A DNA stretch of 64,000 nucleotides, taken from positions 288,755 through 352,754 of IMG/VR virus record IMGVR_UViG_3300023184_000024; one strand, given 5' to 3'. Below are positions 38,218 to 57,575 of the stretch, in pieces. Made by a program: the position numbers and the translations under genes. The notes under the pieces were generated by a model, which did not search any database, had not been told where the DNA came from, and was given only the letters and a program-made list of their open reading frames with translations. Every line of letters starts with the position of its first letter. Position 1 is the stretch's first letter.

Positions 38218-38267
38218 TGTGTAGCGCCGATGGTCGGGCTACACACAGTCATCTTGCTTAATAGGAG
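38218..38267 (+). ncRNA. Structured 5' UTR, ROSE-like RNA thermometer candidate
   Basis: Hairpin TGTGTAGC-G-CCGA..TCGG-GCTACACA, then CTTGCT-taat-AGGAG masking the SD. Confidence 0.65.
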
Positions 38268-38273
38268 AAAACA

Positions 38274-38729
38274 ATGACAAACACTTTAACCCTTCGTTCC
38301 TTAGACATTCCACAAATCGCTAAATTTGGTATCGGTTTCGATAACATGTTTGATGAATTACTACGTGTGAATGCTCAACAATCCAACACAAACTACCCCC
38401 CATATAACATTGTTCAAATCAATGAAAATGAATATATGATTAGCGTTGCTGTTGCAGGTTTCGGGCCTGATAATCTCACAGTTACCAAAGAGAAAAACTT
38501 CTTAGTAATTGAAGGTAATCATGCCATGAACAATGTTGAAACTGACGTGGAACCTACGTATCTACACAAAGGTATTAGTGAGCGCAATTTCCGACGTGAG
38601 TTCCGTTTAGCGGATCATGTAGAAATTGAAAACGCACATTTAGAATTGGGTATTCTTTCAATTCACCTAAAACGTGAAGTTCCTGAAGAACAAAAGCCCA
38701 AGACTATTGCAATTAGTTACACTAAGTAA
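38274..38729 (+). CDS. Small heat-shock protein Hsp20 (IbpA-like)
   Basis: IGFD, NYPPYNI, AVAGF, YLHKGIS.RNF, VPEE.KP..I.I. Confidence 0.95.
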   Translation: MTNTLTLRSLDIPQIAKFGIGFDNMFDELLRVNAQQSNTNYPPYNIVQINENEYMISVAVAGFGPDNLTVTKEKNFLVIEGNHAMNNVETDVEPTYLHKGISERNFRREFRLADHVEIENAHLELGILSIHLKREVPEEQKPKTIAISYTK

Positions 38730-38743
38730 CATTTAATGTAACA

Positions 38744-38767
38744 AGTGCGGGAGATTTTTCCCGCACT
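38744..38767 (+). terminator. Stem-loop after hsp20 (terminator or stability element)
   Basis: AGTGCGGGA..TCCCGCACT; weak U-tract. Confidence 0.5.
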
Positions 38768-38783
38768 ATTCCTAGGACTAATT

Positions 38784-39092
38784 ATGCCAACACCAGCAAC
38801 TAAAACTAAAACAAAACCCAACACAGTATTAGCAGAACCCCCGATGTTTAAAGTTATCTACATCAATGATAATCAAACATCCATGGAATTTGTTGTTAGT
38901 AGTTTAATTGACCATTTTCAATACACTCATACCACCGCTGAAAAAATCACAGTGGATATACACAGCGAAGGATCGGCTGTGGTGGCAGTTTTACCGTATG
39001 AAATTGCCGAGCAAAAAGGTATTGAAGTAACAATGAATGCAAGGAATCTTGGCTTCCCGTTGCAGATCAAACTAGAACCCGACAGTAATTAA
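38784..39092 (+). CDS. clpS: Clp protease adaptor ClpS
   Basis: PPMFKVIYINDN.TSMEFV, IH.EG.A, EIAEQK, FPLQI.LE. Confidence 0.92.
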   Translation: MPTPATKTKTKPNTVLAEPPMFKVIYINDNQTSMEFVVSSLIDHFQYTHTTAEKITVDIHSEGSAVVAVLPYEIAEQKGIEVTMNARNLGFPLQIKLEPDSN

Positions 39093-39877
39093 AATTCAAT
39101 TTCAATGCGTCGAGGATAGTAAACAGATTTCTTCCATTTTGTATCGCCCCTACCTCGACAGTTGTTGACATATCTGATGCCGTTGATTGTGGTATCTACG
39201 TCACCGTGATAATGACCAAAGCACCAGGTCTTTACTTTTTTTTCTAAATCGTTGTCAAGTACATATTGCATGAGACTATTGCCTATGCAGTTAAATCGGT
39301 AAGTTCCTGCCAGGTCAATGTCGTGCTGGATAAACACAGGACTTGGCACAGTGTGCGTCATTATTACAATGTTTTTTACATCTTGATGTGTTTGTAACTT
39401 TCCAATAGATTCTCGAAGATACACAGCATCGTTGGTGGCCAACTCGGTGATTGACTCCGCCACGTGGTCTGAACAAAGTGTGTGATCTTTGTACCAAAGC
39501 TGGGAATCTTCAATGGACATAGCAGGATCAAAATCCCAGGTGAACCACCCATTTGTGCCCAATAATGCCACACCGTTGATGATAATCACATTGTCCTGAA
39601 GATAAACCACGTTGGGTATGGTTGACAACTGATGCTTTAAACTTGTATAATTATCATGTATATCATTGAGATAATCCCTGTGTTCGTCGTTGCCGTCAAT
39701 GTAAAAAACTGCTTGGTAATGTTGGCCAAGATGCGTCAGTGTTTCAATCAACACATCAGTATCTTTTGCAACATCTCCAGCAACAAGGCACACAGGACTG
39801 GTGGCTTGGCCAGCCCAATCAAACGAATCCCACGTTTCGATGTGTAGGTCTGAAATCAAATCAAATGCTATTTTCAT
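39089..39877 (-). CDS. Calcineurin-like metallophosphoesterase
   Basis: SDLH, AGD, GNDE, THTVP, FGHYH. Confidence 0.85.
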   Translation of the reverse strand: MKIAFDLISDLHIETWDSFDWAGQATSPVCLVAGDVAKDTDVLIETLTHLGQHYQAVFYIDGNDEHRDYLNDIHDNYTSLKHQLSTIPNVVYLQDNVIIINGVALLGTNGWFTWDFDPAMSIEDSQLWYKDHTLCSDHVAESITELATNDAVYLRESIGKLQTHQDVKNIVIMTHTVPSPVFIQHDIDLAGTYRFNCIGNSLMQYVLDNDLEKKVKTWCFGHYHGDVDTTINGIRYVNNCRGRGDTKWKKSVYYPRRIEIEF

Positions 39878-39903
39878 GATACATATTTAAAAGGATTTAC
39901 ACA

Positions 39904-40257
39904 ATGAATATTATTTTGGGGAAAGAAAACATACTTGGACTTGATTCAAAGTATCTAGTACTAGAGTTAGACACCATGAGATTTGGCAACAGTGCAGATC
40001 CTGTCACTGCATACTGTCTAATAGAAAACCTTCCAATCAACGAAATGCTGACATTAGATCAGTACAGTGATCTGCACGAAAATTTAATACGCAATTATAG
40101 ATTAAAAAATTGGAACTATTGCATCAATGCCATTGAACACCTCAAAGGTAAATGGCACGGGGAAGTGGATTCTTTTTATCAAGACTTGTTGCAACGGATT
40201 ACTGCGATTCAAGATCAAGAACTTGACGACGCCTGGGACGGATATTTAATCCGCTGA
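39904..40257 (+). CDS. Hypothetical protein resembling the C-terminal part of class III nucleotidyl cyclases
   Basis: LELDTMRF..PVTAY, YR.KNW and WDG patterns. Confidence 0.45.
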   Translation: MNIILGKENILGLDSKYLVLELDTMRFGNSADPVTAYCLIENLPINEMLTLDQYSDLHENLIRNYRLKNWNYCINAIEHLKGKWHGEVDSFYQDLLQRITAIQDQELDDAWDGYLIR

Positions 40258-41565
40258 CCTAGCCCGGTTGATGTCTATCAACAGTTGAATAAGATCTTGT
40301 TTTGGCTTGCTAGGCCAATCTCCGGTCAAGTATGTGATATTGTCCGGGTTATGGCTCATTAATTTTCTAAACTCAGTCCAGTCGTGTCCAGTTTTGTATT
40401 GACTGCATGACTGTTTTGCAAGTGCAACATTGTCAGTTAGTTCGTTTATTATCAACTCTGCAAATTCTTTACTGAAAAATCTTGATTGATTGTGTCTTGT
40501 TATTGCAGACATGCATTGGCCTAGTTGCATTTTGTCTCGGTCAGACATTGCACTGAGTTCTTTCATTAACTGTAGAATTTTTTCCATCCTAACAACCGGG
40601 TTTGGTTCTTGGTCATAGCTTTCGTCAAAGAAATCACCAAATGTCTGGAATCCATAGCTTTTTAAATATTCTAAACTGCCAGCTGGACCCACCAATATAA
40701 ACGGTTTGTTGCAGGCAATTGGGCGCAGTGTTTTTTCAGTTAAATGTATTCGTTGATCGTCGAACAAGGTTTCAAGTATGACTTCAAACCAACATTGTTT
40801 GTAATCTTTGACACTGTAATCTGCACTTGCATACGACGGGCTTTGATTTTTTGCAATCTGACAGAGATCGTTGTTGGGCTTAAACTCAGGATTGGTAAAC
40901 ACATGGTCAAGGTAGTGTAGGTCCTGGTCCAGTGGTGCAAAGCTTACATTACACGAGTCTGTCAGGTTGTTGTCAATGAGCAAGTCTAGAAATTTCAATC
41001 TATATTCTCTAGTACCAGACCAAGCACGGTTGTAGATGTTAAAATCTTTTTGATAGTTTTCAGCTAGACGTAATAATTGGGCATCATGTTGGGCGTATCT
41101 AAACCAGTCTCTGGCAATGAATGCATGGCTCCACCAATAAACACCTTTGTACCCGTGTTGCTCGTACAATGCTATTTGGTCAGAGTTTTTTTCACTGTGA
41201 CACAGCAGAGTCTGATCATGTATTGTCTGCCCGGCAAACACAAATTTTAAATTTTGCTTGGTAATAAAACTGGTCAATTCTGGAGTCAATGACATATAAG
41301 TTGTAGGCCGATGATATTGATACCATTTTTCAACTGTTTCTTGGGGCAAATTTTCATATAAGTCAAAATTTAACGGCTCTTGATCATACATAATCATCGG
41401 CACAGTTCGTGCTAGATCGCAGGCCAACAGTTTTACAGACTCTTGTTCTAAGCGTTGTAGGTCGGGCACTTTTTTACTGCCATGAGGAAAAAAACAATAA
41501 ATTATAATGTCTTGATCAATTAAATCACCAATGTAGTGATACAACTTATCTAAAGGAATAAACAT
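40246..41565 (-). CDS. GT10-like ('TEK' motif) putative glycosyltransferase
   Basis: ILET..LTEKTLRPI..KPFILVG..GFQTF..DESYD. Confidence 0.55.
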   Translation of the reverse strand: MFIPLDKLYHYIGDLIDQDIIIYCFFPHGSKKVPDLQRLEQESVKLLACDLARTVPMIMYDQEPLNFDLYENLPQETVEKWYQYHRPTTYMSLTPELTSFITKQNLKFVFAGQTIHDQTLLCHSEKNSDQIALYEQHGYKGVYWWSHAFIARDWFRYAQHDAQLLRLAENYQKDFNIYNRAWSGTREYRLKFLDLLIDNNLTDSCNVSFAPLDQDLHYLDHVFTNPEFKPNNDLCQIAKNQSPSYASADYSVKDYKQCWFEVILETLFDDQRIHLTEKTLRPIACNKPFILVGPAGSLEYLKSYGFQTFGDFFDESYDQEPNPVVRMEKILQLMKELSAMSDRDKMQLGQCMSAITRHNQSRFFSKEFAELIINELTDNVALAKQSCSQYKTGHDWTEFRKLMSHNPDNITYLTGDWPSKPKQDLIQLLIDINRARSAD

Positions 41566-42802
41566 GTCGAGTAAAATAGGTTTTATAGGTTTAGGGAAAC
41601 TAGGCCTAGAGTGTGCTGAAGTTTTTGCAGAACACTATGAAGTTTCAGGTTATGATATTTACCCACGCACCAGCGACTCAGTAAAAGTTTGCAACATTGA
41701 GGACGTGGTAGAAAACAGCGATTGGATTTTTATTGCTGTGCCAACACCCCACAGTGAGGGGTACGATGGATCAGTTCCAAGTTCACACATGAAGCCCAAA
41801 GACTTTGGTCATGATGCTGTGATTGATGCAATCAACAAGGTCAATACATTTGCCACTAGTTCTAAAAAAATTGTGCTTATTTCCACAGTTCTTCCTGGCA
41901 CCACACGCAAACATTTTTACTCGTTGTTGGACAAAAAACATCAGTTTTTGTATAACCCGTATTTGATTGCCATGGGGTCAGTGAAATGGGACATGGTCAA
42001 CCCAGAAATGGTCATGATTGGCACCGAAGATGGTGATCAAACAACTTTGGCCAGCGAGCTCATTGAAATTTATAAACCATTGATGAAAAACGATCCAAGG
42101 TATGTTGTGGGCACATGGGACGAATGTGAAGCAATTAAAATTTTCTACAACACCTTTATCAGTGCCAAGGTTGGTCTTGCCAACATGATTCAAGACTTTG
42201 CACTCAAAATTGGCAACATCAATGTTGATGTGGTCACCAATGCATTGGCACAAAGCACCATGCGTATCATGGGCCCAAAGTACATGACCGCTGGCATGGG
42301 CGATGCTGGAGCCTGTCATCCTCGAGATAACATTGCTCTTCGTTGGTTAGCTGAAGAATACAACATTGGTTACGACTTGTTTGATACCATCATGCATGCT
42401 CGTGAAATCCAAGCAAAGAATCTAGCACAATTTTTGGTAAACCAAGCCAGCAACGGGTTGCCAATTGCCATTCACGGCAAAGCATACAAGCCTGACGTTG
42501 AATACTGCATTGGATCTTACTCAACGCTGGTTGGGCACTATGTCAAAGAACTCGGGCACACTGTGGTTTACGTAGATCCATTGGCCGACAATTCAACTGA
42601 TGTTGTTGCTGAGTTAACTGGACCTCATGTGGTGTTGTGGGCACACAATCGCAAAATCACCTATGAGTACACTGGAGATCAACTTGATACACAGCCATAT
42701 TGTGTTATTCCTCAAGGATCGATAATTGTTGACCCATGGCGCAAACTTGGGGACTCTGAGGAACACACAATTATCCACTATGGCAACACACGTGGTCAGT
42801 AA
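41564..42802 (+). CDS. UDP-glucose/GDP-mannose dehydrogenase family protein
   Basis: GLGKLG, AVPTP, STVLPGT, IKIFYNTF, catalytic-region GACHPRD. Confidence 0.9.
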   Translation: MSSKIGFIGLGKLGLECAEVFAEHYEVSGYDIYPRTSDSVKVCNIEDVVENSDWIFIAVPTPHSEGYDGSVPSSHMKPKDFGHDAVIDAINKVNTFATSSKKIVLISTVLPGTTRKHFYSLLDKKHQFLYNPYLIAMGSVKWDMVNPEMVMIGTEDGDQTTLASELIEIYKPLMKNDPRYVVGTWDECEAIKIFYNTFISAKVGLANMIQDFALKIGNINVDVVTNALAQSTMRIMGPKYMTAGMGDAGACHPRDNIALRWLAEEYNIGYDLFDTIMHAREIQAKNLAQFLVNQASNGLPIAIHGKAYKPDVEYCIGSYSTLVGHYVKELGHTVVYVDPLADNSTDVVAELTGPHVVLWAHNRKITYEYTGDQLDTQPYCVIPQGSIIVDPWRKLGDSEEHTIIHYGNTRGQ

Positions 42803-43298
42803 GTACAATCTTCCTGTATTCTGGAACAATGAATTTAAAACTCTTGACTACATTCAAGAGCCATTCAATGATCCTACCAGTGTGGCACAATGGTTGGCAC
42901 AAGGTTACCACACCAAGATCTGTGGCGACCTGTGTGACATGCGCCATCGGTTGCCTGCGTGGAGTCAACGATTCATTGACATCTATACTGAGATGGGATG
43001 GAAAGACATTGGACTTGCATTTTATCGCATGCCCACTGGCACAGTAATACCAGTGCACGGCGACCTGTACAAACGCTATGTTGAATTGTTCAACTTGCAG
43101 GGCCATGAACAAAGCATACGTCGTGCATTGGTGTTGTTAGAAGATTGGAAACCAGGGCATTACCTTGAAGTTGTTGGCCATCCTTATGTGAACTGGAAAG
43201 CTGGGACCACAGTGGAGTGGAGTTATGATGCTCCGCACTCAGCGGCAAATATTGGTCTTGAACATCGCTATACATTACAAATCACAGGACATTTATGA
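42780..43298 (+). CDS. Cupin/2OG-Fe(II) oxygenase-like protein
   Basis: PVHGD..LEDWKPGH..PHSAANIG..RYTLQITG. Confidence 0.6.
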   Translation: MATHVVSKYNLPVFWNNEFKTLDYIQEPFNDPTSVAQWLAQGYHTKICGDLCDMRHRLPAWSQRFIDIYTEMGWKDIGLAFYRMPTGTVIPVHGDLYKRYVELFNLQGHEQSIRRALVLLEDWKPGHYLEVVGHPYVNWKAGTTVEWSYDAPHSAANIGLEHRYTLQITGHL

Positions 43299-44209
43299 TA
43301 TCATCGTGGAATGAGTGGGACCCGTTAAAAAAGATTGTGGTAGGATCGGCCACCAATGCCAACTGGCCTGTGAATGATCCGGTGTTTGCCCGCGAAGGTG
43401 AAAAAACCAGCTGGAAAGAAACACCTGTGCCACGTGGCCCAGTTCCGCAGAAGATAATCGACGAAACCAACGAAGATCTAGACAAGTTGGCAACAATGTT
43501 GATGAGTCTGGGCGTTGAAGTTGTGCGCCCTGAGTCATTGGATTTTCAAACACACGATGGCATGTACAATTATTGCCCACGTGATAGACTTTTAGTTGTG
43601 GGCAACCGAGTAATTGACACAGCCATGATGTATCCATGTAGAGACATGGAATTACAATGCTATCATGGCATATTAAAAGATGCAGAAATGATATCAATGC
43701 CCAGGGATCAAGGGTTGGTATTAGATGCAGCCAATGTGTGCAGACTGGGCAACAAAATGTTGTTTTTAGAGTCAGCATCGGGCAATCGTGCTGCCTACGA
43801 ATGGTTGTGCGGCCAGTTCCCAGACATTGAAATTGAGTTATGTAACTTCTATGCAGGGGTGCACATTGATTCAACCATTGTGCCGTTGCGTAAAGGTCTG
43901 GTCATGTTGAATTCTAGTCGTGTAAATATGGACACAGTGCCCAAAGTCTTTGATGGCTGGCACAAAATTTGGATAAATGATGTAGTAGCACAAGACTTTT
44001 ACCAATACCCCTACGCATCAAAATGGATAGCTATGAATATGTTAGTGGTAGATCCGCACACAGTGATTTGTAATCAAAGTCAACGTGATTTAATCAAAAC
44101 ACTCAAAAGCTATAAGTTTGAAGTAATACCAATGGAACTGCGTCATAGCCGTACATTGGGTGGTGGATTCCATTGTGCAACATTGGACCTATGGAGAAAA
44201 CATGATTGA
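43295..44209 (+). CDS. Amidinotransferase (glycine/inosamine-phosphate amidinotransferase family)
   Basis: SWNEWDPL, CPRD, DAAN, HID, GGGFHCATLD. Confidence 0.9.
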   Translation: MISSWNEWDPLKKIVVGSATNANWPVNDPVFAREGEKTSWKETPVPRGPVPQKIIDETNEDLDKLATMLMSLGVEVVRPESLDFQTHDGMYNYCPRDRLLVVGNRVIDTAMMYPCRDMELQCYHGILKDAEMISMPRDQGLVLDAANVCRLGNKMLFLESASGNRAAYEWLCGQFPDIEIELCNFYAGVHIDSTIVPLRKGLVMLNSSRVNMDTVPKVFDGWHKIWINDVVAQDFYQYPYASKWIAMNMLVVDPHTVICNQSQRDLIKTLKSYKFEVIPMELRHSRTLGGGFHCATLDLWRKHD

Positions 44210-45260
44210 TAATAATTCGTTAAACTCAACACTGACACTGGCAATTGATAATGCAATACAAGATCTAGTTAATAAAACCATCGACTCGTTGGTGCTAGAC
44301 CCTGCTTGGGTTGCAAAAATAGAATCAATTGTCAATCAAAGTTATGCACAAAGATTTGCTCGACACATCAGCACAGTTGACATTGAGTCAATGGTGGTCA
44401 AGTATCTTGAAGAAGGTGTGGATAGATGGCAAGAAAAATTAAAAAATAATTTTAAAACGAATGGAATCACTGACGATGCAACCTCTTGTCAACTCACAGT
44501 GATGGACGGAGTTGTTGTAGTTGAAAACAATGCAGTTGCAAGAAATCTCACAGTGATTGAAGATTCGGACGTACAAGGAACATTGACCGTTAAAAACCTT
44601 GTGGTAAAAGGATCAATCAACACTGATAATCATTCTTGGAAAGAGTTATCGACTTACATTGTGGACATAACTTTAGAAAAAGTCAATAAACAATGGCGTG
44701 ACGATTTGGCCAAAGAAGTTGTGGCCCTGGCCAAAACACAGGGTATCAGCTTCAAAGAAATTCTAATCAATGACAAACCATTGGTTGTTGACTCTGCACT
44801 AAATTCGTTTATCACACAAACCAGCATCGAACAAACTGGAGTTCTTAAAGACTTAACAGTGTCCGGAGAAGCAGTGTTCAACGATAATACATTGTCAGTG
44901 TTGAATCGTCGAGTGGGAGTTAACACACGTACTCCTGAAATGGCACTGGGACTATGGGACGAAGAAGTGTCGGTGTTGATTGGAAAGCTGTCACAAAATA
45001 ATGCATTTGTGGGCACCGGGCGAGGACAGTCGTTGTCATTGGGCACAAATAGACAACCACAGCTGGAGATCAACACTGACGGACTAGTCACTGTTAAAAA
45101 ATTACAGGTAGATAAATTTCAAATTGGACATGCTACCACTGTACCTGGCCACAGCGGAACAAAAGGCGACTTATTGATCAACAGCGACTTCAAGCAAGAC
45201 CAACCATTTGCTTGGATATGTTTAGGTGGCTTCCGTTGGCAACCACTGAAGGGTGCATGA
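44202..45260 (+). CDS. Hypothetical, possibly fibre-like structural protein
   Basis: Beta-repeat segments (LTVSG, VGVNTRTP) and C-terminal WICLGG..W. Confidence 0.45.
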   Translation: MIDNNSLNSTLTLAIDNAIQDLVNKTIDSLVLDPAWVAKIESIVNQSYAQRFARHISTVDIESMVVKYLEEGVDRWQEKLKNNFKTNGITDDATSCQLTVMDGVVVVENNAVARNLTVIEDSDVQGTLTVKNLVVKGSINTDNHSWKELSTYIVDITLEKVNKQWRDDLAKEVVALAKTQGISFKEILINDKPLVVDSALNSFITQTSIEQTGVLKDLTVSGEAVFNDNTLSVLNRRVGVNTRTPEMALGLWDEEVSVLIGKLSQNNAFVGTGRGQSLSLGTNRQPQLEINTDGLVTVKKLQVDKFQIGHATTVPGHSGTKGDLLINSDFKQDQPFAWICLGGFRWQPLKGA

Positions 45261-45814
45261 TGAAAATTAGCTGGGTAGTTGCTGATGGTTATACGTTTGA
45301 TCCTACTATACATCTTAACCAAGTTAAAGATATCGGGCCGGTCTGGGGATCATGGCGCACATGGAGATCTTGTGGCACTGACAATGTTATCAGTCATGAA
45401 TTTAAAAAATCACAAGAATTATTACAACGGGCATTTCAAGCAGTTTGTAATTTTTATATCCCAAAGCATGATTATCAAGGACACGGCCGTCCGATGGGGG
45501 TTAAACTGTATGATGGTGAATACAACTCTCAGTTAGATCGTGTAGAAGAAATCATAGCAATGCATCTGGCTGCGCAAAGTTCGGACATTGTATTAATGCT
45601 GGGATTTAATTTGGTTATGCCCGAAAACATCACAGACAAATTAGAACAACATAAAATCAAGAATTATCATGGTCTGGTTCGGAGTGCAATTGCTGCCAAC
45701 GAGAATGTACAATGGGTGGCAGTGGATCATGCAAGCACACCAGATCAAGCATATTCAACATTGCCCAATTTCTCTTGCGATGTAATGGATAATGTGTTAC
45801 AATTACTAACTTAA
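45257..45814 (+). CDS. Hypothetical protein (possible degenerate Maf/DUF115-like fold)
   Basis: AMHLAA..IVLMLGFN pattern. Confidence 0.4.
   Translation: MMKISWVVADGYTFDPTIHLNQVKDIGPVWGSWRTWRSCGTDNVISHEFKKSQELLQRAFQAVCNFYIPKHDYQGHGRPMGVKLYDGEYNSQLDRVEEIIAMHLAAQSSDIVLMLGFNLVMPENITDKLEQHKIKNYHGLVRSAIAANENVQWVAVDHASTPDQAYSTLPNFSCDVMDNVLQLLT
45775..45803 (+). promoter_or_regulatory. sigma70-type promoter for uvsE
   Basis: TTGCGA-N17-TACAAT with TG extension. Confidence 0.5.
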
Positions 45815-45838
45815 ACACTATGTTTCTAAAAGGGTTGT

Positions 45839-46855
45839 ATGATCGCTCGTGTGGGTTTTGCTTGCAAATGGATAAATGATCCCAGCCAAGTTGCTGGCCT
45901 AAAACCCAATGCAGTGGATCGTGACCTCAATGGTCGAAGTACAACCATGCGTTGGTTACGTGAACACAAACTTGAAGCCGAACAACGTCAGTGGGACATT
46001 ATGAATCATAATGCTCGTGCTGCCTTGCTGATGGTAGAACGTGTGGGCAGTTTACCCCTACACCTGCGTATGGTACGCCTGGGCAGTGAAATGTTACAAG
46101 GCTACACTGAGCCAGACTGGAAGGCCTGGTGGCAACGCAGGGAAATTCAAGATCACTGTGCTGACATTTTTGCACCTGTGGGTGCTCGTGCTAGAGAACT
46201 GGGAGTGCGACTGAGTTTCCATCCTGGGCAGTTTTGTGTGTTAGCCAGTGAAAGTGACGAAATTGCAGGGAGAAGCATTGAAGAATTTGAATATCATGCG
46301 GACATGGCACGTTGGATGGGCTACGGCAAAACGTTCCAGGACTTTAAGATCAATGTACATATTTCCGGACGGAAAGGTCCTGCGGGTATTCAAAGTGCCC
46401 TCCAACGGCTCAGCCCCGAAGCAAGAAATTGCATTACTATCGAAAACGATGAGATGTCTTGGGGAATAGACGCCAGTTTAGAATTGGCCAGAGACTGTGC
46501 GCTAGTGCTTGATATCCATCACCATTGGATTAAAACTGGAGAATATATTGAAAACAATGATGACCGTATTAAAAAGATTTGTGATAGCTGGCGTGGTGTT
46601 AGGCCTGTTGTACATTACTCCGTCAGTCGTGAAGATGTACTTGTCGGACATTCCCGATCACAACGCCCCGCTCTTGTTCCGTTAATGGAAACAGGCCACA
46701 AAAAAGGCAAACTTAGAGCACACAGTGATTTTTATTGGAACGATGATGTTAATCGGTGGGCAGCCACGCACAGTGCCTGGGCCGACATCATGTGCGAAAG
46801 CAAAGGCAAGAATCTTGCCAGCCAGGAATTTGCAAAGTACTGTGTACCATCATGA
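45839..46855 (+). CDS. uvsE: UV damage endonuclease
   Basis: GFAC, RLSFHPGQF, IENDE, LDIHHH, HYS, RAHSD, MCESK.K. Confidence 0.92.
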   Translation: MIARVGFACKWINDPSQVAGLKPNAVDRDLNGRSTTMRWLREHKLEAEQRQWDIMNHNARAALLMVERVGSLPLHLRMVRLGSEMLQGYTEPDWKAWWQRREIQDHCADIFAPVGARARELGVRLSFHPGQFCVLASESDEIAGRSIEEFEYHADMARWMGYGKTFQDFKINVHISGRKGPAGIQSALQRLSPEARNCITIENDEMSWGIDASLELARDCALVLDIHHHWIKTGEYIENNDDRIKKICDSWRGVRPVVHYSVSREDVLVGHSRSQRPALVPLMETGHKKGKLRAHSDFYWNDDVNRWAATHSAWADIMCESKGKNLASQEFAKYCVPS

Positions 46856-47139: not shown

Positions 47140-47152
47140 TACTACCACTTAT

Positions 47153-51088: not shown

Positions 51089-51089
51089 T

Positions 51090-51278
51090 ATGGATTATAT
51101 TGCTTATTTTATGCTGGGATTTGGATTTGGTATACCGTTTTACTATATCTTTTATTACAATAACTCCATGGATCGACTTGAACGTATGAAACATGATCTA
51201 TCAGTAAAGAAAGAATGGTGTAGAATGTTGGCCGAACAAAAAACAAACAATTCAAAATGGCCAGTGGGTTGGAATTAA
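51090..51278 (+). CDS. Small membrane protein
   Basis: AGGA SD, N-terminal hydrophobic segment. Confidence 0.5.
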   Translation: MDYIAYFMLGFGFGIPFYYIFYYNNSMDRLERMKHDLSVKKEWCRMLAEQKTNNSKWPVGWN

Positions 51279-51292
51279 ATTAGGAGAAAAAA

Positions 51293-51913
51293 ATGACAGA
51301 AGAAATCAAAGATGTAAATGCCAAAGTCGACGAACTTGAAGCAGCCGCAAAGAAGTATGCTAGTAAAGATACAGTTATCAGTATCGGTGGATATGAATTT
51401 ACCCCCGCTAAACTAATGGTGGCAGCCACAATTGTATCATCTATATTAGGTGGACTGTACGGCACATTCGAAGTGTACAAAGACTATGTCGGTATGAAGA
51501 AAAAGATTGCTGAATACTCTGCCCCAGACCTAAGTGGGTTTGACAAGCGTTTAGCAGTCATTGAAGAGAATAGTGCCAAGACCAGCGACTACACACGTGA
51601 TATTAAAACAGACTTAAAAAACGATTTACGTCGTAACGAAACAGTTACTGAGCAAATAGAACGCAGTGTTAAAAATACACAACGTGAAACTGAAGGTGAA
51701 ATGCGTGATATGCGCAAGGCGGTAAGAGAAGACTTGGAAAGAGCAAGAAACGAAGCCAACGCAATTCGCAAGGACATGGAATCAACACGCAAGGAAATCA
51801 ACAGCGAATTTACTGCGGCTCGTAGAGAAATAAACCGTGAAGTAGAAACACTAAAGAGAGAAGTTGACAGTAAAATACAAAAAGCCATTGACAATCCCCT
51901 GGCCAACAAGTGA
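51293..51913 (+). CDS. Single-TM coiled-coil protein
   Basis: AGGAG SD, TM at about aa 42-60, long heptad C-terminus ending DNPLANK. Confidence 0.7.
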   Translation: MTEEIKDVNAKVDELEAAAKKYASKDTVISIGGYEFTPAKLMVAATIVSSILGGLYGTFEVYKDYVGMKKKIAEYSAPDLSGFDKRLAVIEENSAKTSDYTRDIKTDLKNDLRRNETVTEQIERSVKNTQRETEGEMRDMRKAVREDLERARNEANAIRKDMESTRKEINSEFTAARREINREVETLKREVDSKIQKAIDNPLANK

Positions 51914-52594
51914 TTATTGTTTGAGAACAGACCGTACCAGGCTGTCTATGCTGTTGATCAACGGAACATTTTTATAATGTGTTTCTTTGACAGCCAACGG
52001 TATCTCTGTACAGCCTAGTACTACGGCATCGACGCCCCAGGGAATTAACTGATCAATTGTGTTTAATAGCAGATCGTGTGCTTCATCAATCTGGCCTGAC
52101 TTAACAAGATCTATCGCGGGTTGTACAACGTTGTCCATTTGATGTGTGTCGGGCGTGATACATTTCCATCCTGACTTGCCCAAGTAGTCCTGGTATAATC
52201 CCAAACTCATTGTGGCTTTTGTGCCTATTATTCCAACGGTGCCACTGTATATTTTTAATGCTGTTAATTCTTCTGCCACACTGCCCACAATGTGTGTGAT
52301 TGGCACGCCAAGTTGGCTCAACCTGTCAAACCAAAAATGTGCTGTATTGCATGGGATTACAATATGGTCACACCCTGCATTTTTTAAACCCAATACGCCA
52401 GCTTTGAGTTTGGCCCAGGGGAGATCATCTCTATTAATTAAACTGGTACTACGATCTGGCACAGTGGGGTCATTCCACAACACAAAAGGTATGTGTTCTT
52501 GATCGCAAGTGGCCGGAGTTTGTTGAATTAATCTTGTGACAAACTCTGCTGATGCTGCCGGCCCCATGCCACCTAGGATGCCTAGACGTTTCAT
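51914..52594 (-). CDS. Aspartate/glutamate racemase (RacX-like)
   Basis: LGILGGMGP, IPCNTAH, LGCTEIP (both catalytic Cys present). Confidence 0.93.
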   Translation of the reverse strand: MKRLGILGGMGPAASAEFVTRLIQQTPATCDQEHIPFVLWNDPTVPDRSTSLINRDDLPWAKLKAGVLGLKNAGCDHIVIPCNTAHFWFDRLSQLGVPITHIVGSVAEELTALKIYSGTVGIIGTKATMSLGLYQDYLGKSGWKCITPDTHQMDNVVQPAIDLVKSGQIDEAHDLLLNTIDQLIPWGVDAVVLGCTEIPLAVKETHYKNVPLINSIDSLVRSVLKQ

Positions 52595-53196
52595 TTTTTA
52601 TTGAATAACAAGCTGGAAGCAATGCCCATTGCGGTCTGCATCTCTTCTACGTTGTCTGGTTGCTCTTTCCAGCCCACACTAATTTGTCCGATGAATACGC
52701 CAGGTTCAGCGGGTACACTGATACGGCACATATAGTTTATACCATAGTCTTTGTACACAAAGCCAATGAGACTCTGCGGTTTAAGATATGGACTGCAGGG
52801 AATCTTACCTGACATTAAACCAATAACGTCATTGTTGTTATTGTAGTCTTTGGAAAACAATCCAACTTGCAGGCCGTCGTGATTCTTATCTCTTCCTGCA
52901 CCACGTGTGACCAAATAAACAACTTTACGAGTGTTGATTAATGTGTTTACTTCTAGAATGGCAATCATTTCTGCATTGGTATTCTTCAACAAAAAGTTTG
53001 CGGCTTCTTCGTACTTGCCATTCATCCTGGGCAAAGCTTGTTGAGCACGATAAGTTGCCAAAAAGGCATCTTTTTCAGTGTAAACAATCCAGCCGCCAAA
53101 CCCTAATATGCAAAGTAACACAACCGCAAACAAGCGGAATGGACTGGAACCAATCCATTCCAACAGCGTTAACAGTGTAGCTTTAAGTTGTTCCAC
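52591..53196 (-). CDS. T4 gpT-like holin (single TM plus periplasmic GAF-like domain)
   Basis: RLFAVVLL..KDAFLATY, INYM..FIGQISVGW and A..LL C-terminus parallel T4 T as I recall it. Confidence 0.6.
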   Translation of the reverse strand: MEQLKATLLTLLEWIGSSPFRLFAVVLLCILGFGGWIVYTEKDAFLATYRAQQALPRMNGKYEEAANFLLKNTNAEMIAILEVNTLINTRKVVYLVTRGAGRDKNHDGLQVGLFSKDYNNNNDVIGLMSGKIPCSPYLKPQSLIGFVYKDYGINYMCRISVPAEPGVFIGQISVGWKEQPDNVEEMQTAMGIASSLLFNKK

Positions 53197-54460
53197 CAGC
53201 GGCTACCTCTTTGTCACAGACAAATGCTGTGACTGCTACGTTGCCGTGTACATGACTTGCTGTGCGAATCATATCCATTAATGGATCAACTGCGATCAAC
53301 AATACTAACACCGCTTCGCTGGGCAGTTTCAACAAGTCACAAACAACTGCCACTGTGGCCACTGTAAGGATACCTGTTGTGCCTGCACTGGCTAAACCAG
53401 CAAGGATACTGCCTAATAGTACAACCAACAATCCTGTAACACCCAGTGGTGCGTCATAGATGTTGGCAATGAATACTGTGGCAATGGCGTAGTAAACAAT
53501 GCTGCCAATACGGTTAACAGTAAAACTCAGTGGAACTGTAAGTTCAACTCCGCCTTTGTCAAAGTGTAGTTTGTGTAACGCCTCTTGTGCATATGGAATG
53601 CAAGCTAAACTACTACGTGAACTAACAGCAACAATTAATGTTTCTTTGGTTTCTTTAATAACAGTAGCAAGACTTAATCCGCTACGTGCCCAAATTACAG
53701 CAGTACCTGCGGCAATAACCAAGAAGCCACCGATAGCTTGTTGCATTACAAAGTCAAACATGGTCATAAAAATACCAACACCTACTTTACCAACCTGTGA
53801 CGAAATCATTGCTAATAGTGCTATTGGTAGGAAGTAGTTTAGGAATTTAAAGATACTGATACTGGCTTGCTGGACACTCTTTAGTACTTCAACCAACATG
53901 CGCTGACCTTCAGTCTTTAAGTGACCAAGGGCTACACCAAAGATCAAACAGAAGATAACAATCTTCAAACTTTCACCATTGTTTAGTGTGTTGAAGATAT
54001 TTTCTGGAATAAACTTCTCTGCCATTTTACCTGCATTAACTGGTGCGGCTGTTGGCATTGGTTCTTTAAGAGTAATGTTTAAATCAGTGCCACTGTCTTT
54101 ATCGTTGACCAATACACCAAGTTGTGTTTTCTTCTCAGGGGTCATTTCAGTGCCAGTGATCAAAACTGTACCTACTCCAATTGTAGCGGCAATAAACATA
54201 CTGCTGACAAAGCCAATGATGATTCTACGAATTAACGCCTGACTGCCTTCTTTTTGTAGCAAGCCAATAATACCAACTAGAATAGTAGCAAGTAAGAATG
54301 GTAGTACAACTACCTTTAATAAACTAATATAGATACTGCCAATGCTGTCCAGTCCAATACTAAATGCTGGAGCATAAACTCCGCTTAGTATACCTACAAT
54401 AATTGATCCTAAGATGGTCCAAGGACTTGTCAGGAAACTTTTTAAATGTGATGTTGTCAT
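53183..54460 (-). CDS. Dicarboxylate/amino acid:cation symporter (DAACS family)
   Basis: IPENIF, SSRSS, LASAG, D.LMDMIRT; multi-TM. Confidence 0.9.
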   Translation of the reverse strand: MTTSHLKSFLTSPWTILGSIIVGILSGVYAPAFSIGLDSIGSIYISLLKVVVLPFLLATILVGIIGLLQKEGSQALIRRIIIGFVSSMFIAATIGVGTVLITGTEMTPEKKTQLGVLVNDKDSGTDLNITLKEPMPTAAPVNAGKMAEKFIPENIFNTLNNGESLKIVIFCLIFGVALGHLKTEGQRMLVEVLKSVQQASISIFKFLNYFLPIALLAMISSQVGKVGVGIFMTMFDFVMQQAIGGFLVIAAGTAVIWARSGLSLATVIKETKETLIVAVSSRSSLACIPYAQEALHKLHFDKGGVELTVPLSFTVNRIGSIVYYAIATVFIANIYDAPLGVTGLLVVLLGSILAGLASAGTTGILTVATVAVVCDLLKLPSEAVLVLLIAVDPLMDMIRTASHVHGNVAVTAFVCDKEVAAGGTT

Positions 54461-54469
54461 GATGTGTCC

Positions 54470-55288
54470 TTATTTCTTTTCTGCTTTGTAACGATCCATT
54501 AACTTTTTAGTGTCAATATTATTGTATTCATTTTTAATAACGTAATTAACAATGCTTAACAATTGAATTGCTCGGGGATTCACAGCAATAGCAATGTTAT
54601 CTACGCTGTCGCTGATTGTAATTGACTTAGTAGTAATTGCCGCGTCGGGCTTTTCAAAAGCAATTTTCTTGATTTCAAATTCATCACGGTAAGCGGCAGC
54701 AATGTCGCCACGTGTGACTTTGTCAATGATCACATCCCATTTTTCTTCAGGAAGGAATACTGCGTTGGGAAAGTTTACACGAGCAAATGTATCGTAACTT
54801 GAGTTCTTGATAAAACTTATCTTGCCATTAAAATCTCTAATGACTTGGTATACTTCACGTCCTTGGCTGTTCTGACTTAGCCACAAACGATTAATAACCA
54901 AACTCTGTCTTAGTTTAATGTAAGGATCGCTGAATCTAACAACTTGTAAACGTGGCCCAGTTACGGATAGTTTACTAACTGCAATATCTGCTTTACCGTC
55001 ACGAACCTGTTCTACAACTTCAGCAAAACTTTCAGCATCGCGTCTGAACTGCACTGGCACTCCGAGTAGGACACTAATTCGTCGAGCAATCTCAACGTCG
55101 AGACCTCGAATATTATCCTCGTCACCACTGAAGAATGGAGGATTGTCTTTTTTGGTCATTGCCACAACAAGCACATTGGCTTTTTTGATTGCGGCAATAT
55201 CTGCGGGCAGAGGTACGGTTGACGTTGGTAACTGTGCAGACGCAACAGAGGCCAACAACATTAGTACAGAGGCGAGTAATTTTTTCAT
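54470..55288 (-). CDS. Periplasmic amino-acid binding protein (SBP family 3)
   Basis: Signal peptide MKKLLA.., DNPPF, GLDVEIA, ADIAVS.LSVT..R..FSDPY. Confidence 0.88.
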   Translation of the reverse strand: MKKLLASVLMLLASVASAQLPTSTVPLPADIAAIKKANVLVVAMTKKDNPPFFSGDEDNIRGLDVEIARRISVLLGVPVQFRRDAESFAEVVEQVRDGKADIAVSKLSVTGPRLQVVRFSDPYIKLRQSLVINRLWLSQNSQGREVYQVIRDFNGKISFIKNSSYDTFARVNFPNAVFLPEEKWDVIIDKVTRGDIAAAYRDEFEIKKIAFEKPDAAITTKSITISDSVDNIAIAVNPRAIQLLSIVNYVIKNEYNNIDTKKLMDRYKAEKK

Positions 55289-55349
55289 TTGTATGTGTCC
55301 ATAATGTAGGTATTTAATACCCAATGTTATTTATGTTTTTAGATGTTAC

Positions 55350-55378
55350 AAAAAAAAGTCCCTTGCGGGACTCTTTTT
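55350..55378 (-). terminator. Rho-independent terminator (possibly bidirectional)
   Basis: On the - strand AGTCCC-GCAA-GGGACT followed by a T run. Confidence 0.8.
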
Positions 55379-55619
55379 ATTTTGCCGCTGTTTTGGGCGC
55401 TTTGGGTTTTACAGGTGCCTTGGGCTTTGGTTCTGCCTTGGGTGTTGCTTTAGGTGTTGCTTTAGGTGTTGCAGGCGCCTTTGGCTTAGCAGGTGCTGCC
55501 ACTGATGCTTCGGTGCCAGCAGGCACAATTTCAACATTAGGAGCAGATGCTTCTACTTTGTATGGTGCTTCTACAACCGTTGGGGTCGGCTTAAAAAAGT
55601 CTAAAATTTTCTTTAACAT
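55377..55619 (-). CDS. Small Pro/Lys/Ala-rich (histone H1-like tail) protein
   Basis: PKAT/PKAP repeats; SD (AGGAG), TAAATA and terminator all on the - strand. Confidence 0.75.
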   Translation of the reverse strand: MLKKILDFFKPTPTVVEAPYKVEASAPNVEIVPAGTEASVAAPAKPKAPATPKATPKATPKAEPKPKAPVKPKAPKTAAK

Positions 55620-55653
55620 TAATATCTCCTTAAAATGTCAGTGAAGTATTTAA

Positions 55654-56688
55654 CTAACTTGCAGTATCGAGCGTAGATTTAATATCTGCAATCATGCGGG
55701 CCACCCAAGCTGTTTTCATTGTTAGATCATAGTTGTGTTCAACAATGGGCTGACACAGTTGATAAATCTTGGCTTGTTCTTGTGTCTGCAAATATGCAAC
55801 TTGCTCTAACATCAATTTTACCCTGACCGATATATCGGGCTCCGAGTCGTAACTTTCATCAATGATGCCATGAAATGTTTGAAATCCAAGCTTTCTTAAA
55901 TTATGCAGATAGTATTGCCCACCGGCAACCACAAACAATCTACGACACATCATTGGTTTTATAATTTTTTCAGTAAAAAAACTAAAACTATTTTCACTTT
56001 GTGTTTCGGCAATTAAACTGTAGGCGCTGTGATTATAAACATCAATTGGCACCAATTGACTTAGACTAACAATGGTAGAATCTACCACAACTTCGGAACC
56101 TGTAAATGTAATTTCATTTTCAGGCAAATCAACAGGCCAAATGAATTGGCTCGACGAGTAATTTCTAAGATCAAGATCCACGTTGGTTGGATAATAAGTT
56201 ACTATGTTCTGACTGTGGTCCATTGAGTCATAAACCATTGATCTATGCACCTTGCGCCGGCCCAACAAAACATCAAAGAATTTGTCCTTGGGCAACACGT
56301 TGCTGACTTTGGGCAACCAATTTTGCTGTGTGTGATAAAAATCAGTGGTGCTCCAAAAGAAATAATAATGAAACTTGACCTGACTATGCCCGGGAGTCCA
56401 ATTTAAAATGCCGGCAATGTAAAAAACTACGTTTGGCCTATCAAATTTTTTGCACCAATGATCGTCGATGAATTCGGGCAAGAACACCAAGGCCTTGCTG
56501 GCATGCGACACTATTTTTTCCAGTTCAGATTCAGTGTCATTGCCAAAGTCTTGTGTTTCCCACAAAGCAACACACTCATTGCTGGGCAATGACAACCAAA
56601 CGTCAAGATCATTGACTATGTTGCCATCAACGCCGGTTTCTTCAAACCAGTATTGTAGATTTGGATTGCTGATATAAATGTGTTTCAC
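55654..56688 (-). CDS. GT10-like ('TEK' motif) putative glycosyltransferase
   Basis: IAET..FTEKIIKP..GFQTF..DESYD. Confidence 0.55.
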   Translation of the reverse strand: MKHIYISNPNLQYWFEETGVDGNIVNDLDVWLSLPSNECVALWETQDFGNDTESELEKIVSHASKALVFLPEFIDDHWCKKFDRPNVVFYIAGILNWTPGHSQVKFHYYFFWSTTDFYHTQQNWLPKVSNVLPKDKFFDVLLGRRKVHRSMVYDSMDHSQNIVTYYPTNVDLDLRNYSSSQFIWPVDLPENEITFTGSEVVVDSTIVSLSQLVPIDVYNHSAYSLIAETQSENSFSFFTEKIIKPMMCRRLFVVAGGQYYLHNLRKLGFQTFHGIIDESYDSEPDISVRVKLMLEQVAYLQTQEQAKIYQLCQPIVEHNYDLTMKTAWVARMIADIKSTLDTAS

Positions 56689-56751
56689 AGTGTATTTACT
56701 GCTGGTCGTTATAGTAAGTGTAAATCAACAACAACGGGTGCTAACTACATA

Positions 56752-57459
56752 ATGATTGAATTTATAACAATGTTGGTAATGACACACATTACCATTCTAT
56801 GTGTCACATTGTATCTGCATCGTAGCCAAGCTCACAAGTCAGTTACGTTCCATCCAATTGTTGCACACGCCATGAGATTTTGGCTATGGATGACTACCGG
56901 ACAAATTACCCGACAATGGGTAGCGGTACATCGCAAGCATCACAGATTCACAGAAGTACACGGTGATCCACACAGCCCGCATGTGTTTGGTTTTTGGCAT
57001 GTGCTGTGCAAAGGTGCTGTGCTGTATCATACTGCCAGTAAAGACTCGGCAATGGTGGCACAATATGGTGCTGGCACACCCGATGACTGGATTGAACGCA
57101 ATGTTTATTCCAAGCATAGTAGACTGGGCATTGCGTCAATGCTGTTGATCAATATAGCTGTGTTTGGTGCATGGGGACTACTAATATGGGGCATACAAAT
57201 GATATGGATCCCATTCTGGGCCGCCGGTGTCATCAATGGAGTGGGACATTGGCTGGGGTACCGCAATGGCGAAACCAAAGACCACAGTCAAAATATCAGT
57301 CCCTGGGGTATCGTTATTGGCGGAGAAGAACTACACAACAATCACCACATTAACCCTGCCAGCCCCAAATTGAGTAGCAAGTGGTGGGAGTTTGATATAG
57401 GATGGGCGTGGATACGTGTGCTAGAGATGGTCAAGTTGGCCAAGGTGCGCACAGTTTAG
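56752..57459 (+). CDS. Fatty acid (acyl-CoA/lipid) desaturase, DesA-like
   Basis: His boxes HRSQAH, HRKHH and HNNHH; DPHSP. Confidence 0.93.
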   Translation: MIEFITMLVMTHITILCVTLYLHRSQAHKSVTFHPIVAHAMRFWLWMTTGQITRQWVAVHRKHHRFTEVHGDPHSPHVFGFWHVLCKGAVLYHTASKDSAMVAQYGAGTPDDWIERNVYSKHSRLGIASMLLINIAVFGAWGLLIWGIQMIWIPFWAAGVINGVGHWLGYRNGETKDHSQNISPWGIVIGGEELHNNHHINPASPKLSSKWWEFDIGWAWIRVLEMVKLAKVRTV

Positions 57460-57490
57460 TGATCATTCACTAGAGAAAAATACCAAAAGA

Positions 57491-57521
57491 TGTTGCACTG
57501 CAACATAAATAATGTTACAAT
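57491..57521 (+). promoter_or_regulatory. sigma70 promoter overlapped by a palindromic operator (PhaR-box-like)
   Basis: TGTTGCA-C-TGCAACA palindrome at 57491-57505; TTGCAC-N17-TACAAT. Confidence 0.6.
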
Positions 57522-57526
57522 AGAAC

Positions 57527-57575
57527 ATAGGGTGCTGAATAGGTCGGGCCCTGTAGTAAACTCGCTTAATAGGAG
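57527..57575 (+). ncRNA. Structured 5' UTR, second copy of the hsp20-type leader
   Basis: ATAGGGT-G-CTGA..TCGG-GCCCTGT, then CTCGCT-taat-AGGAG. Confidence 0.6.

What the first reader, a model, noticed from the sequence alone, without database searches (positions are those of the whole stretch)
38218..57575. Two copies of a covarying structured 5' UTR (38218-38267 before hsp20; 57527-57575 before the phasin-like gene)
Seen: both leaders have an outer stem, a bulged G, an inner CYGA/TCGG stem with a shared GGTCGGGC core, a short spacer, then CTYGCTTAATAGGAGAAAA. The outer stems differ in sequence but both pair (TGTGTAGC/GCTACACA versus ATAGGGT/GCCCTGT). Known: ROSE thermometers use U(U/C)GCU to pair with the SD of small heat-shock genes. 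Inference: a phage thermometer or protein-binding RNA co-regulates two unrelated stress genes; its presence on a phasin-like gene is unexpected.
Basis: partly seen in the sequence, partly recalled or inferred. Interest (0 to 1): 0.7.

Follow-up and report, generated by a model that had tools for sequence, protein, structure and literature searches.

The report
Phage ROSE-like leader on chaperone genes
An uncultured 353-kb freshwater jumbo phage carries two copies of a small structured mRNA leader that closely resembles the bacterial ROSE heat-shock RNA thermometer. In related phages the same leader precedes hsp20, dnaK, groES and an unknown 90-residue gene, which points to a phage-owned RNA control of chaperone synthesis.

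Summary
Both leaders (38218-38273 and 57527-57581) start about where transcription should begin after sigma70-like promoters. Each folds into a stable 5' hairpin with an invariant bulged G, then a weak hairpin in which CU(U/C)GCUU pairs with the Shine-Dalgarno across a second bulged G.

- **Copy number:** a covariance model finds exactly these two copies in the 352,754-bp genome. It finds 1-3 copies in each of ten related genomes.
- **Covariation:** across 114 distinct homologous leaders, hairpin I has compensatory changes at 7 of 9 and 9 of 11 pairs. The outer SD:anti-SD pair switches C-G to U-A together with GGAG to GGAA.
- **Known family:** the only Rfam family that matches consistently, and over its full length, is ROSE_3, the short Pseudomonas ibpA thermometer. 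Scores stay below its gathering threshold (24-38 bits against 43).
- **Genes served:** a gene-blind scan shows the element before phage hsp20, dnaK, groES and the 90-residue gene.
- **Possible feedback:** the phage Hsp20 is IbpA-like and keeps the Tyr and Arg that E. coli IbpA needs to bind its own leader.

Best reading: a ROSE-type translational control element, heat-sensing and possibly also titrated by the sHSP, spread over a phage chaperone set. The function is untested. The "phasin" label is weak. I rate it a new variant of a known kind.

The parts
38182..38210 (+). sigma70-like promoter of hsp20 (TTGATT, 17 nt, TATAAT)
   Evidence: 10 of 12 matches. A -10 box followed by AAATA is kept in relatives.
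38218..38245 (+). hsp20 leader hairpin I: 8-bp outer stem, bulged G at 38226, 4-bp inner stem, UGG loop. It starts at about +1 of the predicted transcript.
38248..38252 (+). Spacer GUCAU, the 5' arm of a helix with AUGAC of the start codon region (38274-38278)
   Evidence: RNAfold MFE. Duplex energy with own start region against the other gene's start region.
38253..38267 (+). Hairpin II core: anti-SD CUUGCUU (bulged G at 38256), loop, SD AGGAG
38274..38729 (+). hsp20 gene, IbpA-like small heat-shock protein (151 aa). Y41 and R104 correspond to E. coli IbpA Y34 and R93.
38745..38768 (+). GC-rich hairpin between hsp20 and the ClpS-like gene; possibly a weak terminator
   Evidence: read from the sequence. 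The terminator scan did not call it.
57490..57506 (.). Perfect 17-bp palindrome over the -35 position of the 90-aa-gene promoter; candidate operator
57516..57521 (+). -10 box TACAAT of the 90-aa-gene promoter. The -35 is weak (TTGCAC at 57493-57498, 17-nt spacer).
   Evidence: read from the sequence and kept in relatives. The consensus scan did not call it.
57527..57554 (+). 90-aa-gene leader hairpin I: 7-bp outer stem, bulged G at 57534, 4-bp inner stem, AUAGG loop
57556..57560 (+). Spacer GUAAA, the 5' arm of a helix with UUUAC just after the start codon (57585-57589)
   Evidence: This helix is in the MFE of several relatives but not of the window copy.
57561..57575 (+). Hairpin II core: anti-SD CUCGCUU (bulged G at 57564), loop, SD AGGAG
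57582..57854 (+).
57882..57920 (+). Terminator-like hairpin plus T-run after the 90-aa gene, which makes it a single-gene unit

Best explanation
Each copy is a ROSE-type cis-acting translational control leader.

Proposed mechanism:
1. Host RNA polymerase starts at a sigma70-like promoter.
2. The transcript begins with a stable hairpin I. It has a variable outer stem, an invariant bulged G and a short GC inner stem. It does not melt, and it probably scaffolds and stabilises the mRNA.
3. A weak AU-rich hairpin II follows. In it CU(U/C)GCUU pairs with AAGGAG across a bulged G.
4. In the hsp20 and 90-aa leaders a gene-specific helix also ties up the start codon region.
5. In the cold or unstressed state the ribosome-binding site is occluded. 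Warming opens hairpin II and allows translation.
6. Possibly, loss of a bound sHSP opens it as well.

The phage lineage took this device from proteobacterial ibpA genes and copied it onto other genes. In this genome those are hsp20 and the 90-aa gene. In relatives they also include groES and dnaK. The phage's chaperone set is then induced together without needing the host sigma32.

Shown here: the structure, its covariation, its kinship with ROSE_3, and its distribution over genes. Inferred: occlusion of the ribosome-binding site, and the signal that relieves it.
For: Structure:
- RNAfold gives two hairpins in the window copies and in most relatives.
- RNAalifold on an unfitted MAFFT alignment gives hairpin I with 9 of 11 pairs compensated.

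Pair counts:
- hsp20 set: 54 distinct leaders, hairpin I 99.8% paired, 7 of 9 pairs changed on both sides. No shuffle of 500 reached the observed values, and slid controls gave 43-50% paired.
- 90-aa set: 60 distinct leaders, 9 of 11 pairs compensated.
- G-U pairs at fixed positions (U-G in 51 of 54 and 37 of 60) fit only sense-strand RNA.
- SD:anti-SD helix is 93-96% paired. Its outer pair is C-G 103, U-A 8, U-G 2, C-A 1. Fisher p = 7e-10, not corrected for phylogeny.
- U(U/C)GCU is in 106 of 114 leaders. The hairpin I bulged G is in 114 of 114 and the hairpin II bulged G in 111 of 114.

Start-codon helix:
- Spacer with own start region: -5.55 and -3.17 kcal/mol.
- Spacer with the other gene's start region: -0.5 and -0.9 kcal/mol.

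Kinship with ROSE:
- ROSE_3 (RF02523) matches positions 1-69 of 69 in both window copies, at 26.2 and 23.8 bits (E 5e-4 and 2e-3). Relatives reach 38.2 bits.
- The hairpin I core GAUGCCG...CGGGUC is nearly the ROSE_3 consensus.
- The phage model also picks up the Salmonella ibpB leader and hairpin I of two proteobacterial ibpA leaders.

Genes served:
- hsp20 and the 90-aa gene in this genome.
- groES in two related genomes and in 12 of 13 viral groES loci.
- A gene-blind pattern scan gave hsp20 62, 90-aa gene 7, dnaK 5, groES 2 and 4 chance hits.
- Relatives that lack the leader get no model hit (L051, L135, L144).

Published properties of the short Pseudomonas ROSE-like element match this layout: two hairpins, U(U/C)GCU pairing the SD, a heat-stable hairpin I and a melting hairpin II (PMC3669281).
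Against: - No experiment bears on temperature response.
- Rfam's gathering score for ROSE_3 is not reached by any copy.
- Hairpin II is nearly invariant in the hsp20 set, so most of its pairs give no covariation evidence.
- Predicted SD occlusion is only moderate. SD unpaired probability at 25 C is 0.23-0.25, ranking 19th and 23rd of 106 GGAG-bearing start regions in this genome.
- Predicted melting between 4 and 50 C is gradual, not a switch.
- The start-codon helix is absent from groES leaders and is not in the MFE of the window's second copy.
- A lake phage rarely meets classical heat shock, so temperature may not be the natural signal.
Confidence: 0.55

Rival explanations
1. The leader is mainly the operator of a protein feedback loop. 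The phage IbpA-like Hsp20 binds the shared leader and represses translation of its own mRNA and of the other leader-bearing mRNAs. When misfolded or aggregating proteins titrate Hsp20, for example during mass virion protein synthesis, repression is lifted. This can coexist with thermosensing.
For: - E. coli, Cedecea and Vibrio IbpA repress their own translation by binding the ROSE-type 5' UTR. This needs R93 and an aromatic Y34; IbpB lacks R93 (PMC10474464).
- E. coli IbpA also controls rpoH translation (PMC10410725).
- The phage Hsp20 best matches the IbpA model (134.5 bits).
- All six phage homologues aligned keep the Y of YPPYN and the R of SERNF. These are Y41 and R104 in window numbering.
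- Hairpin I is conserved in sequence beyond what pairing needs, including the invariant bulged G and the GC...GGG core shared with Pseudomonas. That fits a recognition site.
- The leader also works in an intercistronic position between dnaK and hsp20 (L291), so hairpin I is not just a 5'-end cap.
Against: - No binding data exist.
- The K98 equivalent is E in the phage protein, although an extra R precedes it.
- Some phages have leader-bearing dnaK or groES on contigs where no hsp20 was seen, though those contigs are fragments.
- The complex prediction was not run by the tool.
Confidence: 0.3
2. The leader is a constitutive high-expression cassette with no sensing. A 5'-terminal hairpin protects the mRNA from 5'-end-dependent decay, a strong AAGGAG ribosome-binding site follows, and the conserved CUUGCUU is incidental or a translational enhancer.
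For: - Hairpin I starts at about +1 of the predicted transcripts.
- 5' stem-loops stabilise mRNAs, and this role has been proposed for the Pseudomonas hairpin I (PMC3669281).
- Predicted SD occlusion is not extreme.
Against: - The C-G to U-A switch tracks the GGAG to GGAA change.
- The anti-SD motif and its bulged G are conserved across four gene families.
- One copy lies inside an operon, not at a 5' end.
- The element is restricted to chaperone-type genes rather than to highly expressed genes in general: only 2 copies in 353 kb.
Confidence: 0.12
3. The inverted repeat is a DNA operator for a dimeric repressor, in the manner of CIRCE/HrcA, and acts on transcription.
For: It is an inverted repeat immediately downstream of the -10 box of heat-shock-type genes.
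Against: - Outer-stem sequences vary freely while pairing is kept.
- Fixed G-U pairs would be A-C mismatches on the other strand.
- The bulged G breaks the dyad symmetry.
- One copy lies between two genes without a promoter.
Confidence: 0.03

Closest known systems
ROSE_3 (Rfam RF02523): short two-hairpin ROSE-like RNA thermometer of Pseudomonas ibpA (PMC3669281)
   Same: - A 5' UTR of about 60 nt before an IbpA-type gene.
- A GC-rich hairpin I with a near-identical core (GAUGCCG...CGGGUC) and a bulged G.
- A short hairpin II in which U(U/C)GCU pairs with the SD across a bulged G.
- Full-length alignment to the model.
   Different: - Scores are below the gathering threshold (24-38 bits against 43).
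- Hairpin II is two base pairs shorter on each side and lacks the flanking G-C clamps (alignment gaps).
- The start codon is predicted to be paired here, whereas it is unpaired in Pseudomonas.
- The promoter is sigma70-like, not sigma32.
- It is encoded by phages, and it also precedes groES, dnaK and an unknown 90-aa gene.
Enterobacterial ibpA/ibpB leaders with IbpA self-repression (PMC10474464, PMC10410725)
   Same: - A ROSE-type leader paired with an IbpA that keeps the R93 and Y34 equivalents.
- A second leader copy inside an operon, as before ibpB. The phage model hits the Salmonella ibpB leader at 20 bits.
- One sHSP could control several mRNAs.
   Different: - Enterobacterial ibpA leaders have three to four hairpins.
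- RNA binding by the phage protein is untested.
- The targets here would be phage genes.
Phage lambda cIII RNA thermometer (from my own knowledge, not checked here)
   Same: A phage mRNA whose translation depends on a temperature-sensitive alternative structure around the ribosome-binding site.
   Different: It has an unrelated sequence and architecture, governs the lysis-lysogeny choice rather than chaperones, and is not a ROSE element.
Leader before the sHSP gene of the cultured Sinorhizobium jumbo phage Phosso (PV764938)
   Same: Matches the model built here at 28.4 bits (E 4e-5). It has a hairpin with a bulge, then UCUCGCU pairing with AGGAGA.
   Different: It is more divergent, is not annotated in the record, and belongs to a different phage lineage and host.

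Membership tests
ROSE-like RNA thermometers (ROSE_3 type) | Lies in the 5' UTR directly upstream of a small heat-shock (IbpA/Hsp20) gene | tested here: met
   Copy 1 precedes an IbpA-like hsp20. Copy 2 precedes a 90-aa gene of unknown function, so it fails this feature taken on its own.
ROSE-like RNA thermometers (ROSE_3 type) | Two hairpins: a stable 5' hairpin I and an SD-containing hairpin II | tested here: met
   RNAfold, RNAalifold and pair counts.
ROSE-like RNA thermometers (ROSE_3 type) | U(U/C)GCU anti-SD motif imperfectly paired with the SD, with a bulged G | tested here: met
   The motif is in 106 of 114 distinct leaders and the bulged G in 111 of 114. The helix is 93-96% paired, with a C-G to U-A switch.
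ROSE-like RNA thermometers (ROSE_3 type) | Reaches Rfam's gathering score for RF02523 (43 bits) | tested here: not met
   26.2 and 23.8 bits in the window. The best relative scores 38.2 bits.
ROSE-like RNA thermometers (ROSE_3 type) | Heat-induced melting of hairpin II, with temperature-dependent ribosome binding and translation | not testable with these tools
   Only an in-silico ensemble is available. SD unpaired probability rises from 0.06-0.23 at 4 C to 0.32-0.35 at 50 C, which is not decisive.
IbpA self-repression circuit | IbpA-type sHSP with the R93 and aromatic Y34 equivalents (absent from IbpB) | tested here: met
   Alignment with Salmonella IbpA and IbpB: Y41 and R104 are invariant in the phage proteins aligned. 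The criterion comes from PMC10474464.
IbpA self-repression circuit | The sHSP binds the leader RNA and represses translation | not testable with these tools
Phasin (Pfam Phasin_2) for the 90-aa protein | Reaches the Pfam gathering score for PF09361 | tested here: not met
   16.3 bits against a cut-off of 24.9. Only 6 of 27 homologues hit at E<=1. There is no NCBIfam or PHROG function. The fold search gave only generic helices.

The most novel reading that the evidence does not exclude
Uncultured freshwater jumbo phages and other large phages run their own proteostasis regulon. One ROSE-derived leader, placed on hsp20, dnaK, groES and a new 90-aa gene, is read both by temperature and by the phage's IbpA-like sHSP acting as an aggregation sensor. 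Phage chaperone output then tracks the folding load of infection, independently of host sigma32. The 90-aa protein would be a new member of that chaperone set.
Probability: 0.3. Interest if true: 0.75.

Novelty: new variant of a known kind. Interest (0 to 1): 0.62.

Why it matters
- ROSE elements are described as leaders of bacterial small heat-shock genes in alpha- and gamma-proteobacteria. Here a close relative is phage-borne, driven by sigma70-like promoters, and spread over four gene families, including dnaK and groES.
- That would be a post-transcriptional substitute for the sigma32 regulon inside viral genomes.
- It ties an unknown, widespread 90-aa phage protein (986 homologues) to chaperone genes through their shared leader.
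- The near-identity of hairpin I between Pseudomonas and these phages argues that this poorly understood hairpin is recognised by something. That bears on the open question of what hairpin I does in ROSE elements, which PMC3669281 leaves unresolved.
- I found no paper describing a phage ROSE-like thermometer in the searchable library.
- A cultured phage, Sinorhizobium phage Phosso, has a related leader and offers a test system.

Tried and rejected
- **Rfam at gathering thresholds on the whole window:** nothing. A weak freshwater-2 (RF02980) hit at 21.8 bits over copy 1 did not recur in relatives and was dropped.
- **DNA searches of cultured phages with both loci:** no match. A protein search with the 90-aa protein also found none.
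- **Identity of the 90-aa protein:** Pfam, NCBIfam, PHROGs, the Atlas, an AlphaFold model (pLDDT 82, three helices) and a fold search all failed to assign a function.
- **Search for the bacterial donor of hsp20:** the best hit is 57% identical, on a small contig binned as Pirellulales that also carries the leader and may be a phage fragment. The remaining hits are 41-49% identical, from Enterobacterales, Vibrionaceae, Caulobacterales and Parvularculaceae. No host call is possible.
- **Metatranscriptome contigs:** contigs from relatives cover hsp20 and part of the leader. One extends to about the predicted start, and none of the pieces shown aligns upstream of 38228. These are assembled contigs of divergent relatives, so they give only weak support for the transcription start.
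- **Protein-RNA complex prediction:** not performed by the tool.
- **Terminator or attenuator reading of hairpin I:** rejected, because no U-run follows it.
- **Chance or recent duplication:** rejected, because each leader type is kept with its own gene across more than 50 divergent relatives.


Full report
**Setting.** The window is the last 64 kb of a 352,754-bp IMG/VR virus record with direct terminal repeats, rated complete. No cultured phage in the collection matched either locus at the DNA level. Hundreds of related contigs exist in lake and other freshwater metagenomes, many from genomes of 320-364 kb.

- Copy 1 precedes a 151-aa IbpA-like Hsp20 (Pfam HSP20; NCBIfam IbpA model 134.5 bits). 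It sits between a ClpX-like and a ClpS-like gene.
- Copy 2 precedes a 90-aa gene. A fatty-acid-desaturase-like ORF lies upstream and a terminator-like hairpin follows the gene.

**The observation.**
- The 16-mer GCTTAATAGGAGAAAA occurs only at the two sites, even with three mismatches allowed.
- The 8-mer core alone is not special.
- RNAfold recovers hairpin I in both copies.
- Copy 1 follows a TTGATT-17-TATAAT promoter ending at 38210.
- Copy 2 follows a TACAAT box at 57516-57521 with a weak -35 (read).
- In both cases hairpin I begins about where transcription should start.

**Comparative evidence for hairpin I.** Upstream regions of 80 hsp20 homologues and 80 homologues of the 90-aa gene carry the same leader with visibly compensated stems, such as CCGA/TCGG, CCCA/TGGG and CTCA/TGAG.
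- RNAalifold on a plain MAFFT alignment of 32 diverse leaders predicts hairpin I, with 9 of 11 pairs compensated.
- I built a covariance model, R1, from that alignment.
- hsp20 set, model-aligned, 54 distinct sequences: hairpin I is 99.8% paired, with 7 of 9 pairs changed on both sides.
- 90-aa set, 60 distinct sequences: 9 of 11 pairs are compensated.
- No shuffle of 500 reached the observed covariation score, and slid partners gave 30-52% paired.
- Caveat: these two alignments are fitted to the model, and the sequences are related.
- Fixed U-G pairs show that the structure belongs to the sense-strand RNA.
- The bulged G of hairpin I is invariant in all 114 distinct leaders.

**Hairpin II.** CU(U/C)GCUU pairs with AAGGAG around a bulged G.
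- In the hsp20 set this helix barely varies, so it is neither supported nor contradicted.
- In the 90-aa set the outer pair switches from C-G to U-A wherever the SD reads GGAA instead of GGAG. Counts are C-G 103, U-A 8, U-G 2 and C-A 1. Fisher p is 7e-10 without phylogenetic correction.
- Seven leaders carry U(U/C)GUCU in place of U(U/C)GCU. By hand, these still pair with the SD in a shifted register around a bulged G. This is my inference from reading the sequences.
- The spacer before the anti-SD is complementary to each gene's own start region: GUCAU with AUGAC for hsp20, and GUAAA with UUUAC for the 90-aa gene.
- Duplex energies are -5.55 and -3.17 kcal/mol with the gene's own start region, against -0.5 and -0.9 for the swapped partners.
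- MFE folds of many relatives show the resulting long, imperfect hairpin that encloses both the SD and the AUG.
- groES leaders lack this extra helix.

**Copy number and the genes served.**
- R1 finds only the two copies in the whole genome.
- Ten related near-complete genomes have one to three copies each.
- The third copy, in two of those genomes, precedes groES.
- 12 of 13 viral groES loci carry the leader, including loci whose GroES is only 56-62% identical to the query.
It gave hsp20 62, the 90-aa gene 7, dnaK 5, groES 2 and 4 chance hits.
- On one contig a second copy lies in the gap between dnaK and hsp20 with no promoter. It is followed by clpS and by the same minus-strand phosphoesterase gene that the window has.
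- This genome itself has neither groES nor dnaK.
- Relatives without the leader exist for both genes and give no model hit (L051, L135, L144).

**Comparison with known families.** In sensitive mode both window copies match Rfam ROSE_3 over all 69 model positions, at 26.2 and 23.8 bits. Relatives reach 38.2 bits. The gathering score is 43, so formal membership is not met.
- The alignments show an almost identical hairpin I core and the U(U/C)GCU:SD hairpin.
- Two base pairs are missing on each side of the hairpin II loop.
- The published Pseudomonas element has the same two-hairpin logic: a heat-stable hairpin I of unclear role and a melting hairpin II. It has a sigma32 promoter and an unpaired AUG (PMC3669281).
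- R1 in turn hits the Salmonella ibpB leader (20 bits) and hairpin I of two proteobacterial ibpA leaders.
- R1 also hits the leader of the sHSP gene of the cultured Sinorhizobium phage Phosso at 28.4 bits.

**Mechanism.** The anatomy fits occlusion of the ribosome-binding site that is relieved by heat. Two facts temper this.
- Predicted occlusion is moderate, ranking 19th and 23rd of 106 comparable start regions.
- Predicted melting is gradual.

A second layer is plausible. E. coli-type IbpA binds its own ROSE-type leader through R93 and Y34 and so senses aggregation (PMC10474464). The phage Hsp20 keeps both residues, as R104 and Y41. For a phage, folding load may be a more natural signal than lake temperature. 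Sequence conservation of hairpin I beyond pairing, and its use inside an operon, fit a recognition role.

I give 0.55 to thermometer-type control, 0.30 to sHSP feedback as the main or an added layer, 0.12 to a non-sensing stabiliser cassette and 0.03 to a DNA operator.

**The 90-aa protein.**
- It has 986 homologues, all unnamed and viral or metagenomic.
- The model is three helices at pLDDT 82.
- Phasin_2 is only a sub-threshold hit.
- The fold search was uninformative.
- Its link to stress rests on sharing a leader with chaperone genes.

**Verdict.** The feature is real, it is conserved, and it is a phage-borne variant of the ROSE-like leader reused on several gene families. Its function remains to be tested.

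Noticed in passing
window 57490-57506: A perfect 17-bp palindrome, ATGTTGCACTGCAACAT, lies over the -35 position of the 90-aa-gene promoter. It is the only exact copy in the 353-kb genome. Most relatives keep it with symmetric changes (TGTTGC..GCAACA to TGCTGC..GCAGCA). It may be an operator for a dimeric regulator.
   Followed up: partly
L291:5588-5657 and L291:7569-7638: On another phage contig the leader precedes dnaK. A second copy fills the dnaK-hsp20 gap with no promoter. clpS follows, then the same minus-strand phosphoesterase gene as at window 39089-39877.
   Followed up: partly
L409:340-406 (Sinorhizobium phage Phosso, PV764938): A cultured 469-kb jumbo phage has a related, unannotated leader before its small heat-shock gene (28.4 bits with the model built here). 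It is a possible experimental system.
   Followed up: partly
L051, L135, L144: These are natural variants that lack the leader. One hsp20 sits directly behind another gene. Two 90-aa genes keep the palindrome and the -10 box but run straight into the SD.
   Followed up: partly
window 36751-39092: A proteostasis cluster: a ClpX-like ATPase (36751-37950), a small ORF, hsp20, and a ClpS-like adaptor whose likely start is the ATG at 38784. I did not look for a ClpP gene.
   Followed up: no
window 38745-38768: A GC-rich 9-bp hairpin lies between hsp20 and the ClpS-like gene. It has only a weak T tail and may be a partial terminator.
   Followed up: no
window 56680-57459: A fatty-acid-desaturase-like ORF (Pfam FA_desaturase, E 5e-10) lies directly upstream of the 90-aa gene. 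Desaturases are classic temperature-adaptation genes.
   Followed up: no
L189:327-397: A 6.9-kb contig binned as a Pirellulales MAG carries the closest non-viral hsp20 (57% identity) together with the leader (35 bits). It may be a mis-binned phage fragment.
   Followed up: no
window 38198-38276: A sub-threshold match to Rfam freshwater-2 RNA (21.8 bits against a gathering score of 49.9) shares the AAGGAGAAAAC..AUG tail. It was not seen in relatives.
   Followed up: partly
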